IMG/VR virus record: IMGVR_UViG_3300036766_002289
Location: 124,001-188,000 of that record
Length of the DNA stretch: 64,000 bases
Strand: one strand, 5' to 3'
Each line of letters begins with the position of its first letter. The first letter of the stretch is position 1. Positions 42,747-46,858 of this stretch are shown here, one piece after another. A program made the translations under genes and the position numbers. The notes beneath the pieces are model-generated. The model saw nothing but the letters and a program-made list of their open reading frames with translations. It had not been told where the DNA came from and made no database searches.

Positions 42747-43730
42747 ATGATTACCAGAGATAAAGTTCGTGGTATGTTCTTAGGCGTTGCCATTGGGGAT
42801 TCTTTTGGAATGCCTTTCGAAAGCAAGAAGTTTGAAGATGTTAAAGCCCTAAAAAGAACTAATACTTATCGAAGTAGTAATCGTGGTAAGAAGGGCAGTT
42901 GGACTGACGATACACAATTAACGATTGCTACAGCATTGGCCATGCTTGAATCAGGTGATTTCAACATGGACAACATTGCTGCTTGGCATGTCAAAGCTTA
43001 TAAAGCTTCGACTTCAGGGTGGGGAGGCACGACTAGGGATGCTGTTAAAAAACTCTCTGAAGGAACACATTGGTCAGAATCTGGTAAATTTGTAGGACAA
43101 AATAATAGGGGATTTGGCAATGGTGTAGTGATGAAAGCAGCACCATTAGCTGCATACTTTGCTCTTGCCAATGACGACTTGGATTATGACAATTCCATTT
43201 GTGATTTTACAATGATGACCCACCAAACAAGTGTGGCTGTTAGTTCTTGTTATGCCCATGTAGAAGCTCTAATGTATTGTTTGCGAGAAACAATTGATAG
43301 CTTCCGCAGTAGAGAATTTATTGAGGCGATAGTGGAGTCCAGTACGATTGGTGCCGCTTATTTCCCAGAAACTTTCAAGGATGATATAACCACTAAGTTA
43401 GAATCTATAAGAGAAATATACAGTATTCCAGATTTACTTTTTGATGACGGTTATTTAGTCAGCGAATTTGGCGGCGGTTCTTGTTATGTTTATGATTCTT
43501 TACCATTTTCTTATGCATTTTTCCTACGTGGTCCATTCAGTATTGAGAGCATGTATGATGTTGCATATGCTGGCGGTGACTCTGATACAAATGCCTCCAT
43601 CGTTGCAAGCATGATCGGCGCAATCTGTGGAACGAAAGTTTTCCCAAAAACTCTGGTAGAAGGATTATCTGCAAAAAATCAAATTTTGAGAATAGCCGAC
43701 CTGTTTTATGAAAAGTTCTTTACAAATTGA
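42747..43730 (+). CDS. ADP-ribosylglycohydrolase (ARH/DraG family)
   Basis: AIGDSFG, WTDDTQL, GNGVVMK, GGDSDT. Confidence 0.9.
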   Translation: MITRDKVRGMFLGVAIGDSFGMPFESKKFEDVKALKRTNTYRSSNRGKKGSWTDDTQLTIATALAMLESGDFNMDNIAAWHVKAYKASTSGWGGTTRDAVKKLSEGTHWSESGKFVGQNNRGFGNGVVMKAAPLAAYFALANDDLDYDNSICDFTMMTHQTSVAVSSCYAHVEALMYCLRETIDSFRSREFIEAIVESSTIGAAYFPETFKDDITTKLESIREIYSIPDLLFDDGYLVSEFGGGSCYVYDSLPFSYAFFLRGPFSIESMYDVAYAGGDSDTNASIVASMIGAICGTKVFPKTLVEGLSAKNQILRIADLFYEKFFTN

Positions 43731-44222: not shown

Positions 44223-44849
44223 ATGGCTATTCTCAAGAAAAAAGATAATGTGAAAACACCAGCACAGATGCGTGTTCTAATTGCCAAGGATGTACTGGAG
44301 ATGCTACCGCTCTTGCATCCAGTGCAGGGAACGTACCTATTGCTAAAAGAATCACTCCGTAAAGACTTACGTGACGCCAAGACAAATATGAAATTTGTTG
44401 CTAGTAATTGTAAAGTGTGCGCTCTGGGTGCCTGTTTCCTTGGATGGGTTCATCATTTCAATACGCTTTCCATACTTGATCTTAATTGCACCGACCATGA
44501 GCAAATGATTAGATTGATGAGCGATGTTTTTGATGCAGGTCAACTCGAAATGATTGAGGCAGCGTTTGAGGGATTTGATAGGTTAGCTAGTTATGTAACG
44601 CGCTACCCCGATCTTCATGACCGCCTTCGCGCCATCATGGAAAACATCGTTGTAAATAAAGGAACTTTTGTCCCATTGGATAATCAAATGGAAGCTTCAT
44701 GCACTTGGGGTGACGGCCCTGATGTACTGCTAAGCATCAACGGCACACATTATGATTTAACTGCTGACGAGGCAATACGGTTATCTGTGGATTTAAGTCT
44801 AGCAGCAGCATGGGCAAAAGAGCAGAATGAACAAACACTTTGCCGATAA
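44223..44849 (+). CDS. Hypothetical phage protein
   Basis: ORF track; CALGAC motif. Confidence 0.55.
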   Translation: MAILKKKDNVKTPAQMRVLIAKDVLEMLPLLHPVQGTYLLLKESLRKDLRDAKTNMKFVASNCKVCALGACFLGWVHHFNTLSILDLNCTDHEQMIRLMSDVFDAGQLEMIEAAFEGFDRLASYVTRYPDLHDRLRAIMENIVVNKGTFVPLDNQMEASCTWGDGPDVLLSINGTHYDLTADEAIRLSVDLSLAAAWAKEQNEQTLCR

Positions 44850-45120
44850 ACTGTTGTCTGGGGAAACCGTTGAATGTCGTCCGCGTGGTAGCTCCATGAC
44901 CCCTAAGATTAAGTCTGGCCAATTGATAACAATATCACCAGACCTATCTGAACTACATAAGGGTGACGTAGTGTTCTGTAAGGTTAAAGGCAAGTATTTC
45001 GTTCATCTGTTATCTGCTATCCAAGGTGAACGTTATCAGATAAGTAATAACCACAACCATGTTAATGGCTGGATTGGCAAAAATTCTATGTTTGGTAAAG
45101 TAGTAAAGGTATCAGACTAA
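44827..45120 (+). CDS. S24/S26 peptidase-like small protein
   Basis: GSSMTP, GDVVFC, VHLL. Confidence 0.65.
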   Translation: MNKHFADKLLSGETVECRPRGSSMTPKIKSGQLITISPDLSELHKGDVVFCKVKGKYFVHLLSAIQGERYQISNNHNHVNGWIGKNSMFGKVVKVSD

Positions 45121-45308
45121 TGGAACTCCAGAAACGAAAACCAGAATATGCAATTCCAATATGGTGTCAAATGCCAATGGAGGAACATTTGTGTTTTGGT
45201 GGCTGTTGGGGAATTTCGAGTGGTAGAGTCGCGGAGGAAGGGCACGAATACTGTAAGGACTGTGAGTATAACGAAGATAATCTAAATGTGTCCAGTGGTG
45301 TAAGGTAG
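45120..45308 (+). CDS. Small Cys-rich hypothetical protein
   Basis: ORF track; 3' end overlaps the tRNA-like RNA. Confidence 0.45.
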   Translation: MELQKRKPEYAIPIWCQMPMEEHLCFGGCWGISSGRVAEEGHEYCKDCEYNEDNLNVSSGVR

Positions 45309-45473
45309 CACACTTTGGCTGAGAAGGTAAGGTTCGATTCCTATGTGGTGTTAAGGGCACGCCAGATTCAACTGGAAGTTTTAGGTTAAATTCCTAAACA
45401 GTGGTGTAAGGCTGTGATGAGCAGAGCGCACATCGAAGCCAAGGTAGATAAGGTTCGAATCCTTGCTGGGCAA
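45289..45473 (+). ncRNA. tRNA-like RNA (tRNA-Gln-type shell) with a 116-nt insert replacing the anticodon loop
   Basis: Acceptor TGTCCAG/CTGGGCA+A, D arm GTGT-AAGGTA-GCAC, 8-bp stem CTTTGGCT/AGCCAAGG, T arm TAAGG-TTCGAAT-CCTTG. Confidence 0.65.
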
Positions 45474-45490
45474 TTAAAAAGGAGATTACT

Positions 45491-45862
45491 ATGAAAGACC
45501 TTGTGATGGAAGTCCAGAATTTTTTTAACGGTATGAACAATGTAACCTTACTTGGTGGCCAAGTTCTGGCCCAAGTAAAAGTTGGTGATGAAGTTGAAAT
45601 CGTCACCACTAGATCGGGCCGCAAAACCCGAATAGTTGGTATTAAACGATTCAACCAAAGTCTAGACTGTGTTAATGGTGGTGTGGCTGGACTTCTATTT
45701 GAAGGAATAGGAGACTTAGATTTTAGGACTACTCCACTACCCCCAAATCCTTATAATCCCAAGACTCAATTAGAAGAATATCTCAAGTTCAGCAGCAAAG
45801 ACAACGATGCCGAAAACGTAAGGATCGTTAGGGCACCTCAACCTGTTGCTTGGCAGTTTTGA
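45491..45862 (+). CDS. Stand-alone EF-Tu domain II-like protein
   Basis: GQVLAQVKVGDEVEIV...KTRIVGIKRFNQSLD...GLLFEGI resembles EF-Tu GRVERGIIKVGEEVEIV...TGVEMFRKLLD...GVLLRGI. Confidence 0.7.
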   Translation: MKDLVMEVQNFFNGMNNVTLLGGQVLAQVKVGDEVEIVTTRSGRKTRIVGIKRFNQSLDCVNGGVAGLLFEGIGDLDFRTTPLPPNPYNPKTQLEEYLKFSSKDNDAENVRIVRAPQPVAWQF

Positions 45863-45871
45863 GGACTAATC

Positions 45872-46081
45872 ATGAGAACACTACAATTAATATTTATGTT
45901 GCTCGGTGCGTTGCCAGCTTTGCTTATTACTAGGATGCTGCCAAATCCACATAGAAGCGGCAAACATGGACTCGCAGTATTGATGCATGTGTCGCTTATC
46001 AGCGGGACAATAATGGCTTTAATAGTCTTGGCATTGGCCTTATACATTATATTTAATTTCCTTGAGGTCACAAATGCCTAA
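45872..46081 (+). CDS. Small membrane protein
   Basis: GAGG ribosome-binding site; two hydrophobic segments. Confidence 0.55.
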   Translation: MRTLQLIFMLLGALPALLITRMLPNPHRSGKHGLAVLMHVSLISGTIMALIVLALALYIIFNFLEVTNA

Positions 46082-46295
46082 AATTCTAGAAGAAGCCTTA
46101 ATGTGGTTGGGAATTTGGGCAATTATTTTTAATATCTTTTTTGCTGTGCCCTTATTCTTTTATTTAAGAAGCATATCAAGGGAGAAGTTTATATGCATCA
46201 TGTATATTCTGCACCATTGGTTGCAGAATTTTGATTGTGGTTATGGGCAAGATGAAGTGTTGAGGGATTTAGCAAAGGTGGAAAAACATGTCTAA
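46074..46295 (+). CDS. Small membrane protein
   Basis: Coupled ORF; hydrophobic segment. Confidence 0.5.
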
Positions 46296-46506
46296 GGAAG
46301 ATGTTATTCAGGCAGAAGGTAAAGTCTTAGAATCTTTGCCTAATGCACAGTTCAAAGTGAAGCTGGATACTGGTTATGAAATCATAGCCCATATATCTGG
46401 CAGGATGCGAAAGAACTTTATCAAGGTGATCCCAGGCGACGTTGTAGAAGTCGAGATTTCACCTTATGATTTGACCAAGGGTCGAATCAGCCGTAGAACA
46501 AGATGA
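46288..46506 (+). CDS. infA: Translation initiation factor IF-1
   Basis: [20 protein letters not shown]...[28 protein letters not shown]. Confidence 0.96.
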
Positions 46507-46512
46507 TTGTAT

Positions 46513-46585
46513 GCTCTTGTAGCTCAATGGGAGAGCGACGAACTCTAAATTCGATTGGTTGAGGGTTCGAATCCCTCCAAGAGCG
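46513..46585 (+). tRNA. Amber suppressor tRNA (anticodon CTA)
   Basis: Acceptor GCTCTTG/CAAGAGC+G, D arm GCTC-AATGGGA-GAGC, loop CT-CTA-AA (46543-46549), T arm GAGGG-TTCGAAT-CCCTC. Confidence 0.88.
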
Positions 46586-46858
46586 TTATGAAAACTGCAA
46601 TATTATTGCTGTACATTATAGGCAGCTTGTGCTTCCTAACAGGCAGTATATTATCCCTTATAATTCATTTTAGAGAATAAACATGGACGAAGGACTTAAA
46701 AAGATCATGCATCTTGCCCTTGTGTCGGGCATCATTACTCTATATGCTGTATTTTATCCATTACACGCATTGATTACATTAATTCTAACATGCTGTGTAT
46801 TGTTCATCATGAGGAATGGGTAAAATTCTACTTGACTTAACAATTCAAGGTGATTATC

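What the first reader, a model, noticed from the sequence alone, without database searches (positions are those of the whole stretch)
45474..45862. Stand-alone EF-Tu domain II protein directly behind the tRNA-like RNA
Seen: the RBS AAGGAG follows the RNA 3' end within about 10 nt. About 80 residues align by eye with EF-Tu domain II, with no GTPase or domain III, plus a Pro-rich tail. Established: EF-Tu domain II contacts the aminoacylated acceptor end and the 30S subunit. Inference: an RNA-protein pair (tRNA mimic plus acceptor-end binder), or an EF-Tu decoy against defence systems that target EF-Tu. It is clustered with IF-1 and the suppressor tRNA within 1.3 kb.
Basis: partly seen in the sequence, partly recalled or inferred. 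Interest (0 to 1): 0.78.

Follow-up and report, generated by a model that had tools for sequence, protein, structure and literature searches.

The report
Stand-alone EF-Tu domain II phage protein
A huge phage carries a small gene, kept by selection, that encodes only the middle beta-barrel domain of the bacterial translation factor EF-Tu, altered so that it can hardly do EF-Tu's job; what it binds is unknown, and it does not depend on the odd tRNA-like RNA just upstream.

Summary
Window 45491-45862 (+) is a 123-aa gene with an AAGGAG ribosome-binding site 6 nt after a tRNA-shaped RNA (45289-45473).

**What it is.** The protein is EF-Tu domain II alone. Pfam GTP_EFTU_D2 scores just over its cut-off. 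The AlphaFold2 model (pLDDT 92) superposes on E. coli EF-Tu residues 207-297 at Z 11.7. The genome has no GTPase domain and no domain III. The "Pro-rich tail" is really a roughly 28-residue loop plus helix inserted before the last barrel strand.

**Family.** At least nine sequence clusters exist, all in one clade of huge phages. The gene is under purifying selection (dN/dS about 0.1).

**What it has lost.** The residues EF-Tu uses for the aminoacyl-CCA end are not kept, and the loop that contacts the 30S subunit varies in length and sequence. It is only 27-34% identical to EF-Tu domain II, against 53-67% among cellular EF-Tu fragments.

**Link to the RNA.** The RNA is real, novel and highly conserved, but it precedes the gene in only 4 of 13 loci. 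One close relative has deleted it cleanly while the protein stays under selection. An obligate RNA-protein pair is therefore not supported. A decoy role has no positive support but is not excluded.

**Best guess (low confidence).** It is a free-standing binding barrel for an RNA 3' end, comparable to domain C2 of IF2.

The parts
45491..45862 (+). Gene for the 123-aa stand-alone EF-Tu domain II protein (stop codon included)
   Evidence: ORF. Pfam PF03144. PDB phmmer hits are nearly all EF-Tu. AF2 model pLDDT 91.9. VIA-align Z 11.7 to EF-Tu 207-297. dN/dS 0.12 against L002.
45491..45727 (+). Residues 1-79: beta-barrel strands, equivalent to EF-Tu residues about 207-288
   Evidence: DSSP strands 4-71. 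Foldseek rmsd about 2 A over 73-81 columns to EF-Tu. Residue mapping.
45728..45805 (+). Residues 80-105: family-specific insertion, made of a Pro-rich loop with the conserved NPYNP motif and a helix (94-105)
   Evidence: AF2 secondary structure. Not aligned to EF-Tu by VIA-align: 89 of 117 residues align. Motif conserved across the family.
45806..45832 (+). Residues 106-114: strand that closes the barrel (invariant V110 and I112)
   Evidence: model range 1-117 maps to EF-Tu 207-297.
45479..45484 (+). Shine-Dalgarno sequence AAGGAG of the domain II gene
   Evidence: Read directly from the sequence.
45289..45473 (+). tRNA-shaped RNA. It has a 7-bp acceptor stem, a D arm and a T arm. The anticodon arm is replaced by an 8-9 bp stem that opens into a multi-hairpin insert of about 100 nt. 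No CCA is encoded.
   Evidence: ARAGORN with introns allowed. Folds. Covariation between the window and L019 in the acceptor and long stems. 95-98% identical to L002, while the flanks are 55-90% identical. No Rfam family.
45120..45308 (+). 62-aa Cys-rich ORF directly upstream. Its last 20 nt overlap the RNA's 5' acceptor strand and D arm, and its stop codon TAG sits in the D loop.
   Evidence: Homologues in L002 and L004 are 79% and 62% identical. dN/dS 0.24-0.33.
45872..46081 (+). 69-aa hydrophobic small protein (membrane-protein-like by eye) downstream of the gene
   Evidence: Weak homologue in L002.
46062..46295 (+). Hydrophobic small protein of 73-77 aa, conserved between the domain II gene and IF-1 in L004 and L019
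   Evidence: (64% identity to the L004 73-aa protein).
46288..46506 (+). Phage-encoded translation initiation factor IF-1
   Evidence: Pfam eIF-1a E 1.1e-24. TIGR00008 infA 109 bits against a cut-off of 61.
46512..46586 (+). Amber suppressor-type tRNA (anticodon CUA)
   Evidence: ARAGORN. Rfam tRNA 66.6 bits.

Best explanation
**Shown.** This is a real, selected gene of a huge phage. It encodes only the domain II beta-barrel of EF-Tu, with a family-specific Pro-rich loop and helix inserted before the last strand. It descends from EF-Tu rather than from IF2, EF-G or SelB, and has since been re-tooled:
- the residues EF-Tu uses for the aminoacyl-CCA end have changed;
- the GRG loop that touches the 30S shoulder varies in length and sequence;
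- it does not need the upstream tRNA-like RNA in cis.

**Inferred, low confidence.** It works as a free-standing ligand-binding barrel within the phage's island of translation genes (IF-1, suppressor tRNA, tRNA-like RNA). It would use the face that binds the acceptor end in EF-Tu. That strand now reads I-K-(R/H)-(F/Y), like the R846-R847-F848 strand of IF2 domain C2, and a conserved F-R pair lies next to the position of EF-Tu R288. With this face it would hold the single-stranded 3' end of a tRNA or tRNA-like RNA. That could protect the end, sequester it, or deliver it during phage-directed translation.
For: **Identity and fold:**

**Stand-alone:**

**Selection:** dN/dS is 0.12 (window against L002) and 0.09 (L004 against L019). 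The family comprises at least nine clusters of 106-155 aa, all stand-alone.

**Restricted to one clade:** all loci with enough flanking sequence are syntenic with this phage.

**Mechanistic lead:**
- K52 replaces EF-Tu E259 in 8 of 9 members. The next residue is R or H in 6 of 9. The one after it is aromatic in 8 of 9. F78-R79 is kept in 7 of 9.
- hhalign places window I51-K52-R53-F54 on E. coli IF2 L845-R846-R847-F848.
- IF2 domain C2 alone binds the fMet-tRNA acceptor end as strongly as whole IF2 (PMC4611024).
- The IF2 mutation R847G weakens that binding (PMC8709274).

**Context:** the gene lies next to the tRNA-like RNA in 4 loci and near IF-1 and tRNA(CUA) in the window, L004 and L019.
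Against: - The IF2 C2 alignment is local (30 columns) and weak (probability 18.5%).
- The family is neutral to acidic: pI 4.7-6.8 in 8 of 9 members.
- EF-Tu pocket residues E215, D216, T228, R262 and N273 are not kept.
- Without domain I, half of EF-Tu's pocket is missing.
- The RNA is absent before the gene in most loci, and the gene stays under selection where the RNA is deleted.
- The more distant members lie about 5 kb away, in another gene neighbourhood with no IF-1 directly beside them.
- No binding has been measured. The complex prediction gave no answer.
Confidence: 0.3

Rival explanations
1. Competitor or decoy for a protein that docks on EF-Tu domain II. Candidates are a defence sensor that recruits EF-Tu (Avs7-like), the capsid-peptide/Lit system, or a CdiA-type tRNase toxin. 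The free barrel would soak up the docking protein and spare or uncouple host EF-Tu.
For: - EF-Tu domains II and III are a known docking surface in phage-host conflict. Avs7 binds them (PMC13581612). PDB holds CdiA, Tse6 and Q-beta replicase complexes with EF-Tu.
- The gene is accessory: it is absent from the related 595-kb phage LR756511 near IF-1.
- It has moved about 5 kb within the island.
- It evolves faster than its neighbours: non-synonymous difference pN is 0.16, against 0.04 for the S24-like gene in the same window-L002 comparison; IF-1 has pN 0.06 against the more distant L004.
- The family is mostly acidic.
Against: - It is only 27-34% identical to EF-Tu domain II, against 53-67% among cellular EF-Tu fragments.
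- The residues it shares with EF-Tu are mainly glycines and hydrophobic residues, as expected of the barrel core rather than of a surface patch (reading of the alignment).
- It has no domain III, which the Avs7 contact includes.
- Lit and the type IV Thoeris protease cut in domain I, so it cannot act as a substrate decoy.
- No PADLOC or PHROG family matches.
Confidence: 0.2
2. Ribosome-binding modulator. The barrel would occupy the 30S shoulder site used by domain II of EF-Tu and IF2, and would act with phage IF-1 to bias initiation or elongation towards phage messages.
For: - The gene is two small genes upstream of phage IF-1 in the window, L004 and L019.
- Huge phages are known to carry initiation and elongation factors (PMC7162821).
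- The domain II barrels of translational GTPases contact the 30S shoulder (established knowledge).
Against: - The loop that corresponds to EF-Tu S219-V226 (GRG), which by established knowledge contacts 16S rRNA helix 5, varies in length and sequence across the family.
- The family is not basic.
- IF-1 linkage is absent in the more distant members.
- Co-folding with phage IF-1 gave no signal, which the tool rates as no answer.
Confidence: 0.12
3. Obligate ribonucleoprotein with the upstream tRNA-like RNA.
For: - The two are adjacent, 6 nt to the RBS, in the window, L002, L003 and L019.
- The RNA is the most conserved segment of the locus.
Against: - The RNA is absent upstream of the gene in 9 of 13 loci, and the contig that carries P0006 leaves no room for it.
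- No copy was found in the 12-kb loci L008 and L009 or in L011 and L012.
- L004 and L005 carry a clean 158-nt deletion of the RNA, yet the protein is intact and the L004-L019 pair shows dN/dS 0.09.
- A caveat: the short contigs cannot show whether the RNA sits elsewhere in those genomes.
Confidence: 0.08
4. A binding module for an unrelated phage or host protein, acting through the family-specific NPYNP loop and helix and having nothing to do with translation. The barrel would serve only as a scaffold.
For: - The most distinctive conserved surface elements are the insertion (NPYNP and the N-D-A-E turn), which EF-Tu lacks.
- The neighbouring genes in the distant members have no known function.
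Against: There is no positive evidence for any partner. The gene stays within one genomic island that also carries IF-1 and tRNA genes.
Confidence: 0.25
5. A decaying remnant of a captured tuf gene, with no function.
For: It covers only a fragment of EF-Tu.
Against: - It is under purifying selection.
- Its edges match the domain boundaries exactly.
- At least nine diverged clusters keep an intact ORF and family-specific motifs.
- The fold is predicted with confidence.
Confidence: 0.03

Closest known systems
Domain II of bacterial elongation factor EF-Tu (Pfam PF03144 GTP_EFTU_D2)
   Same: The beta-barrel fold is the same: Z 11.7, 89 residues aligned to E. coli EF-Tu 207-297, and the domain boundaries match. 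The fold-signature residues are kept (the G-x-x-V-E-I stretch and the glycines). EF-Tu is the best hit in every sequence and structure search.
   Different: There is no GTPase domain and no domain III anywhere in the genome. Identity is 27-34%. The aminoacyl/A76 pocket residues are replaced and the 30S-contact loop is variable. A loop and helix of about 28 residues are inserted before the last strand.
Domain C2 of initiation factor IF2, a beta-barrel that alone binds the fMet-tRNA acceptor end
   Same: It is a homologous type of barrel that works as an independent binder of an RNA 3' end (PMC4611024). The window protein's K52-R53-F54 aligns with IF2 R846-R847-F848, and R847 matters for tRNA binding.
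   Different: Profile similarity is weak and local (probability 18.5%). The protein is clearly closer to EF-Tu (probability 96%). The second basic residue is kept in only 6 of 9 family members.
Stand-alone small proteins with the EF-Tu domain II fold in bacteria and archaea (ESM Atlas and AlphaFold DB clusters of 89-139 aa)
   Same: They are single-domain proteins of similar size and the same fold (TM 0.61-0.64).
   Different: phmmer against 1.84 billion representatives returned only the phage family plus proteins that look like ordinary EF-Tu or fragments of it. The cellular stand-alone clusters are therefore not detectably the same sequence family. Their functions are also unknown.
Translation genes of huge phages (IF1, IF3, EF-G, EF-Tu, EF-Ts, ribosomal proteins; Al-Shayeb et al. 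2020)
   Same: It belongs to the same kind of genome (390-590 kb, 48 tRNAs, IF-1) and the same general theme of phage-encoded translation parts.
   Different: That paper's main text lists elongation factors as such and does not mention a domain-II-only protein. This protein cannot be an elongation factor.
tRNA and tRNA-like RNAs (for the upstream RNA)
   Same: The acceptor stem, the D arm (a 17-mer shared with phage tRNA-Gln and suppressor-type genes) and the T arm are present with covariation. U1-A72 and G2-C71 resemble tRNA-Gln.
   Different: There is no anticodon arm: a 9-bp stem leads to an insert of about 100 nt that holds two more T-arm-like hairpins. The Rfam tRNA model does not match, and neither does any other Rfam family. 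No CCA is encoded. The genome has no Ro/TROVE protein, so a Y-RNA-type partner protein is not present.

Membership tests
Pfam GTP_EFTU_D2 (PF03144), the EF-Tu domain II fold | Profile HMM score at or above the gathering threshold | tested here: met
   30.4 bits against a cut-off of 30.3, E 5.4e-7, residues 28-79. The same match appears in the genome search at 30.7 bits. The margin is thin.
Pfam GTP_EFTU_D2 (PF03144), the EF-Tu domain II fold | Six-stranded beta-barrel that superposes on domain II of a solved EF-Tu | tested here: met
   AF2 pLDDT 91.9. Foldseek top 50 are all EF-Tu, rmsd about 2 A. VIA-align Z 11.7, with 89 residues on EF-Tu 207-297.
Elongation factor EF-Tu (TIGR00485 equivalog) | GTPase (G) domain | tested here: not met
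   The protein is 123 aa. There is no PF00009 match anywhere in the 390-kb genome.
Elongation factor EF-Tu (TIGR00485 equivalog) | Domain III | tested here: not met
   No PF03143 match in the genome. In the structural alignment the C-terminal part is the closing strand of domain II, not domain III.
Elongation factor EF-Tu (TIGR00485 equivalog) | Whole-protein score above the curated cut-off | tested here: not met
   28.6 bits against a cut-off of 522.4.
EF-Tu-type binder of the aminoacyl acceptor end | Pocket residues E215, D216, F218, T228, E259, R262 and N273 (E. coli numbering; the list of residues is from established knowledge) | tested here: not met
   Only F218 is kept. E259 is K, T228 is G, and the others vary across the family.
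EF-Tu-type contact with the 30S shoulder | Conserved loop S219-V226 with G222-R223-G224 | tested here: not met
   The loop differs in length (insertions of up to about 8 residues) and in sequence among members.
IF2 domain C2-like stand-alone acceptor-end binder | Sequence-profile relationship to IF2 C2 | tested here: inconclusive
   hhalign gives probability 18.5%, with 30 columns aligned around the I-K-R-F strand.
IF2 domain C2-like stand-alone acceptor-end binder | Basic-basic-aromatic strand (E. coli R846-R847-F848) that contributes to tRNA binding | tested here: inconclusive
   The window protein has K52-R53-F54. Across the family the counts are K 8 of 9, R/H 6 of 9 and aromatic 8 of 9. 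The functional role of R847 comes from PMC8709274.
IF2 domain C2-like stand-alone acceptor-end binder | Measured binding to the 3' end of an (aminoacyl-)tRNA | not testable with these tools
   This needs EMSA, filter binding or an ester-protection assay.
Anti-defence decoy of EF-Tu | Keeps the EF-Tu surface that the defence protein recognises | tested here: inconclusive
   Overall identity is 27-34%, against 53-67% among cellular EF-Tu domain II fragments. No EF-Tu-like surface patch stands out in the alignment. The host and its defence proteins are unknown.
Canonical tRNA (for the upstream RNA) | Cloverleaf with acceptor, D, anticodon and T arms, detected by the Rfam tRNA model | tested here: not met
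   The acceptor, D and T arms are present with covariation. There is no anticodon arm, and Rfam gives no hit at E up to 1.

The most novel reading that the evidence does not exclude
The barrel is a free-standing binder of RNA 3' ends, an EF-Tu domain II converted to IF2-C2-like chemistry. Together with phage IF-1, the suppressor tRNA and the composite tRNA-like RNA, it would form a phage-specific module. That module would either hold or shield acceptor ends from host tRNA-targeting nucleases, or deliver a special tRNA or tRNA-like RNA to the ribosome without a GTPase.
Probability: 0.15. Interest if true: 0.8.

Novelty: new variant of a known kind. Interest (0 to 1): 0.5.

Why it matters
EF-Tu is among the most conserved and abundant bacterial proteins and a recurrent player in phage-host conflict (Lit, type IV Thoeris, Avs7, Q-beta replicase, CdiA toxins). 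Here one clade of huge phages has taken a single EF-Tu domain, kept it under selection and changed its binding face. That is a clean natural example of domain exaptation from the core translation machinery. Finding its ligand would show either a GTPase-free way of handling tRNA ends or a new way for a phage to interfere with partners of EF-Tu. The adjacent RNA is a strongly conserved, unclassified tRNA-derived RNA and deserves study in its own right.

Tried and rejected
**Readings rejected**
- *The tail is the first beta-hairpin of domain III.* Sequence alignments ran on to EF-Tu residue about 322. The structural alignment rejects this: the C-terminal strand closes the domain II barrel, so model 1-117 equals EF-Tu 207-297.
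- *TAG is recoded because of the suppressor tRNA.* Under the standard code, ORFs of 100 aa or more already cover 85% of the genome, and 141 of 659 end in TAG.
- *The RNA is a recent copy of one of the phage's 48 tRNAs.* No close paralogue was found.

**Steps that gave nothing**
- Co-folding with E. coli EF-Tu, phage IF-1 and the 62-aa ORF scored 0.00. The tool rates this as no answer, so it is not used as evidence.
- No RNA-seq run was listed for this locus. The five runs listed are all DNA-type metagenomes, so RNA ends and processing could not be checked, and read laying was not used.
- PHROGs, PADLOC and BFVD hold no phage family or analogue for this protein.
- Rfam gives no match for the RNA in the window or in L019.
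- The genome has no TROVE/Ro protein, so a Y-RNA-type partner protein is not present.
- Promoter and terminator scans were no better than shuffled sequence.
- An exact 30-mer from the RNA's 3' part matched nothing in the viral contigs.
- Guenneugues et al. 2000 (PMC302095), on the IF2 C2 binding residues, is not held. The residue list recalled from it is not used as evidence.
Full report
**1. What is in the sequence**

Window 45491-45862 (+) is an ATG-initiated ORF of 123 codons. AAGGAG lies at 45479-45484, 6 nt upstream of the ATG. It is also 6 nt downstream of the last base (discriminator A, 45473) of a tRNA-shaped RNA that starts at 45289. All genes in this stretch run on the + strand and are tightly packed. 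Simple promoter and terminator scans are no better than shuffled sequence. Downstream lie two small hydrophobic proteins, a bona fide IF-1 (46288-46506; Pfam E 1.1e-24; TIGR00008 109 bits against a cut-off of 61) and a tRNA with anticodon CUA (46512-46586).

**2. Where the window comes from**

The window is positions 124001-188000 of a 390-kb viral record. The same protein is on record from a 590-kb contig. The genome carries 48 tRNA genes. Its only detectable DNA relative among deposited phages is the 595-kb uncultured phage LR756511.1. DNA-type runs that hold this sequence are from sediment, soil and freshwater metagenomes, and no RNA run was listed.

**3. The protein is EF-Tu domain II and nothing else**

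*Sequence evidence.* Pfam GTP_EFTU_D2 matches residues 28-79 at E 5.4e-7, only just above the gathering score (30.4 against 30.3 bits). Taken alone that would be thin, but other searches agree:
- phmmer against PDB lists 58 sequences; all but two weak hits near the bottom are EF-Tu or EF-Tu fusion chains.
- NCBIfam matches only EF-Tu models, at profile positions 210-289.
- hhalign of the family profile against Salmonella EF-Tu gives probability 96%.

*Structure evidence.* The AlphaFold2 model built on a 13-sequence alignment is confident (pLDDT 91.9, pTM 0.80). In Foldseek against PDB the first 50 matches are all EF-Tu, at about 2 A rmsd over 73-81 columns. VIA-align places model residues 1-117 on E. 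coli EF-Tu 207-297, with 89 aligned residues and Z 11.7.

*Stand-alone status.* The phage genome has exactly one PF03144 match, no GTPase domain and no domain III.

*Correction to the "Pro-rich tail".* Residues about 72-93 form a loop that holds the Pro-rich stretch, and residues 94-105 form a helix. Of these, about 28 residues have no counterpart in EF-Tu. Residues 106-114 are the strand that closes the barrel. My earlier reading from sequence alignment, that the tail was the first hairpin of domain III, is rejected on this basis.

**4. It is a selected member of a small family**

An exhaustive phmmer search of 1.84 billion representatives found 14 proteins at E up to 0.001. P0002-P0008 and P0013 are stand-alone relatives of 106-155 aa, 35-71% identical to the query. 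The rest look like ordinary EF-Tu or fragments of it. With the window protein this gives at least nine diverged sequences (alignment A3).

The family shares motifs that EF-Tu lacks: F-F-N, T-V-L-G-G, I-K-(R/H)-(F/Y), F-x-G-I, F-R, N-P-Y-N-P and N-D-A-E-x-V-x-I.

Selection is purifying. dN/dS is 0.12 between the window and L002, where synonymous sites are near saturation, and 0.09 between L004 and L019.

Every locus with enough flanking DNA is syntenic with this phage, so the family is confined to one clade of huge phages. It is absent from PHROGs and PADLOC. In BFVD the only relatives are full-length GTPases of giant viruses. Stand-alone proteins with this fold do exist in bacteria and archaea. 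They did not appear in the sequence search, so they are analogues in architecture rather than demonstrable family members.

**5. What it has lost relative to EF-Tu**

I numbered the alignment with a Salmonella EF-Tu taken from a held record. The roles of the EF-Tu residues named here come from established knowledge.
- Pocket residues for the aminoacyl group and A76 are mostly gone. E215 and D216 are variable, T228 is G, E259 is K (8 of 9), and R262 and N273 are variable. Only F218 persists.
- The S219-V226 loop with G222-R223-G224, which contacts the 30S shoulder, varies in length and sequence.
- The family is neutral to acidic: pI 4.7-6.8 in 8 of 9 members.
- Identity to Salmonella domain II is 27-34%. 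Four EF-Tu-like fragments from metagenomes (P0009, P0011, P0012, P0015) are 53-67% identical to it.

The protein is therefore not a spare part of EF-Tu. It is a re-tooled domain.

**6. The tRNA-like RNA and the test of linkage**

*The RNA is real.*
- It is 95-98% identical between the window and L002. The flanking genes are 55-90% identical, and synonymous sites in the domain II gene are 66% different.
- A divergent copy in L019 keeps the outer architecture through compensatory changes. The acceptor stem is UGUCCAG/CUGGGCA in the window and UGCCCUG/CGGGGCA in L019. The long stem is CUUUGGCU/AGCCAAGG against CUUUGGUUG/CAACCAAGG. The D and T arms are kept.
- Its D-arm 17-mer is shared with phage tRNA-Gln and suppressor-type genes elsewhere.
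- In place of an anticodon arm it has an 8-9 bp stem that opens into an insert of about 100 nt with two more T-arm-like hairpins.
- It matches no Rfam family.

*Linkage to the protein is only lineage-specific.*
- The RNA precedes the gene in the window, L002, L003 and L019.
- In L004 and L005 the protein is 93% identical to L019's, but the RNA is removed by a clean 158-nt deletion. That deletion leaves only its 5' acceptor strand and D arm, which overlap the end of the 62-aa ORF. The gene then starts directly after that remnant, 5-6 nt past the ORF's stop codon.
- In L006, L008, L009, L010, L011, L012 and L013 other genes abut the domain II gene. On the contig that carries P0006 (no DNA held) a 339-aa gene does the same.
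- A covariance model of the RNA finds no copy in the longer of those loci.
- Because the gene remains under strong purifying selection across the L004/L019 pair, an obligate cis-linked RNA-protein pair is not supported. The caveat is that the short contigs cannot exclude a copy elsewhere in those genomes.

**7. The decoy idea**

Lit and the type IV Thoeris caspase-like protease cut EF-Tu in domain I (after R45 and R59; bioRxiv 10.1101/2024.10.24.620036). A domain-II-only protein therefore cannot be a substrate decoy. Avs7 uses EF-Tu domains II and III as a structural cofactor (PMC13581612), and several toxins dock on EF-Tu (PDB titles). Competing for such a docking protein is conceivable. It would fit the gene's patchy distribution, its relocation within the island and its faster evolution compared with its neighbours. 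Against it stand the lack of EF-Tu-like surface conservation and the lack of domain III. I rate it 0.2.

**8. Most likely mechanism**

The strands that line EF-Tu's acceptor-end face are among the most conserved in the family, but their chemistry has changed. The strand V258-E259-M260-F261 has become I-K-(R/H)-(F/Y), and a conserved F-R pair sits next to the position of R288. hhalign aligns window I51-K52-R53-F54 with E. coli IF2 L845-R846-R847-F848. [quoted passage not shown]

This is a lead, not a test: the alignment is local and has probability 18.5%. Together with the gene's place in an island that holds IF-1, a suppressor tRNA and, in some lineages, the tRNA-like RNA, it makes a free-standing binder of an RNA 3' end the reading I think most likely (0.3). 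Rivals are a competitor for a protein that docks on EF-Tu (0.2), a ribosome-shoulder binder (0.12), an unrelated protein-binding scaffold that uses the NPYNP insertion (0.25), the obligate RNP (0.08) and a dead remnant (0.03). Co-folding with E. coli EF-Tu, phage IF-1 and the 62-aa ORF gave no answer and is not counted either way.

**9. Comparison with what is known, and verdict**

By fold and descent the protein belongs to the EF-Tu domain II superfamily. It is not an EF-Tu, because the G domain, domain III and the equivalog score all fail. Al-Shayeb et al. 2020 list IF1, IF3 and elongation factors G, Tu and Ts in huge phages, with no mention in the main text of a domain-II-only protein. A large comparative survey of jumbo phages does not mention EF-Tu or elongation factors at all. 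A full-text search for the Pfam name together with "phage" found nothing relevant.

I file it as a new variant of a known kind. The finding is real, unusual and selected, but its function is unresolved and the most exciting reading, an RNA-protein pair, is weakened. Interest 0.5.

Noticed in passing
window 45289-45473; L019 5810-5991; L003 672-882: The upstream RNA is an unclassified composite RNA derived from a tRNA. It has a tRNA-Gln-like acceptor (U1-A72, G2-C71), a D arm and a T arm. A 9-bp stem replaces the anticodon arm and leads to an insert with two extra T-arm-like hairpins (45330, 45383) and a second D-arm-like element. The 13-nt repeat CAGTGGTGTAAGG occurs twice (45293, 45399). At the same internal hairpin, L003 and L019 each carry a nested stem with a 7-nt loop that looks like an anticodon loop (GUCCAAA and GUGCUAA); the window and L002 lack it.
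   Followed up: partly
window 45120-45308: A 62-aa Cys-rich ORF (ending in CxxC, possibly a zinc ribbon) overlaps the RNA's 5' acceptor strand and D arm, and its TAG stop lies in the D loop. The same bases therefore serve as coding sequence and as structured RNA. In L004, where the RNA is deleted, the AAGG of the D loop lies about 10 nt upstream of the domain II gene's ATG and could serve as its ribosome-binding site.
   Followed up: partly
L037 3372-3437; L021 6367-6568; L022 2914-3011; L052 474-541: The D-arm 17-mer GTGGTGTAAGGTAGCAC occurs in unrelated phage and metagenome contigs. There it heads ordinary tRNA-Gln or suppressor-type genes, but also other tRNA-like RNAs whose anticodon arm is missing (L037) or replaced by a long stem with an inserted hairpin (L021). 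This hints at a wider class of tRNA-scaffold RNAs in phages.
   Followed up: partly
window 46512-46586: An amber-suppressor-type tRNA (CUA) sits directly after IF-1, and the pair is conserved in L001 and L019. Even so, the genome reads well under the standard code (85% covered by ORFs of 100 aa or more, and 141 of 659 end in TAG). Any use of the suppressor would therefore be local or conditional.
   Followed up: partly
window 42747-43730: An ADP-ribosylglycohydrolase (Pfam E 1.6e-47) lies five genes upstream and is syntenic in L001 and L004. It is a candidate for reversing ADP-ribosylation by a host or a phage enzyme.
   Followed up: no
window 44827-45120: A 97-aa protein with only the S24/LexA-type peptidase domain (Pfam E 1.6e-8) and no DNA-binding domain. 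It is very conserved: 80-86% identity to L001 and L004, and dN/dS 0.03 between the window and L002.
   Followed up: no
No ordinary tRNA-Ser or tRNA-Tyr is found among the 48. The phage may carry several non-canonical tRNA-like genes.
   Followed up: no
window 50412-51242 and L008 4947-5777, L009 4963-5976, L011 1829-2659: In the more distant relatives the domain II gene sits directly after a conserved 276-337-aa protein of unknown function (46-61% identical to the window's copy) and a weak dual-specificity-phosphatase-like protein. In the window those genes lie 5 kb downstream, so the domain II gene has moved within the island.
   Followed up: partly
whole record: The viral record held is 390,039 bases and classed as "provirus", yet the identical protein is on record from a 590,099-base contig. 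The record may therefore be a trimmed part of a larger assembly.
   Followed up: no
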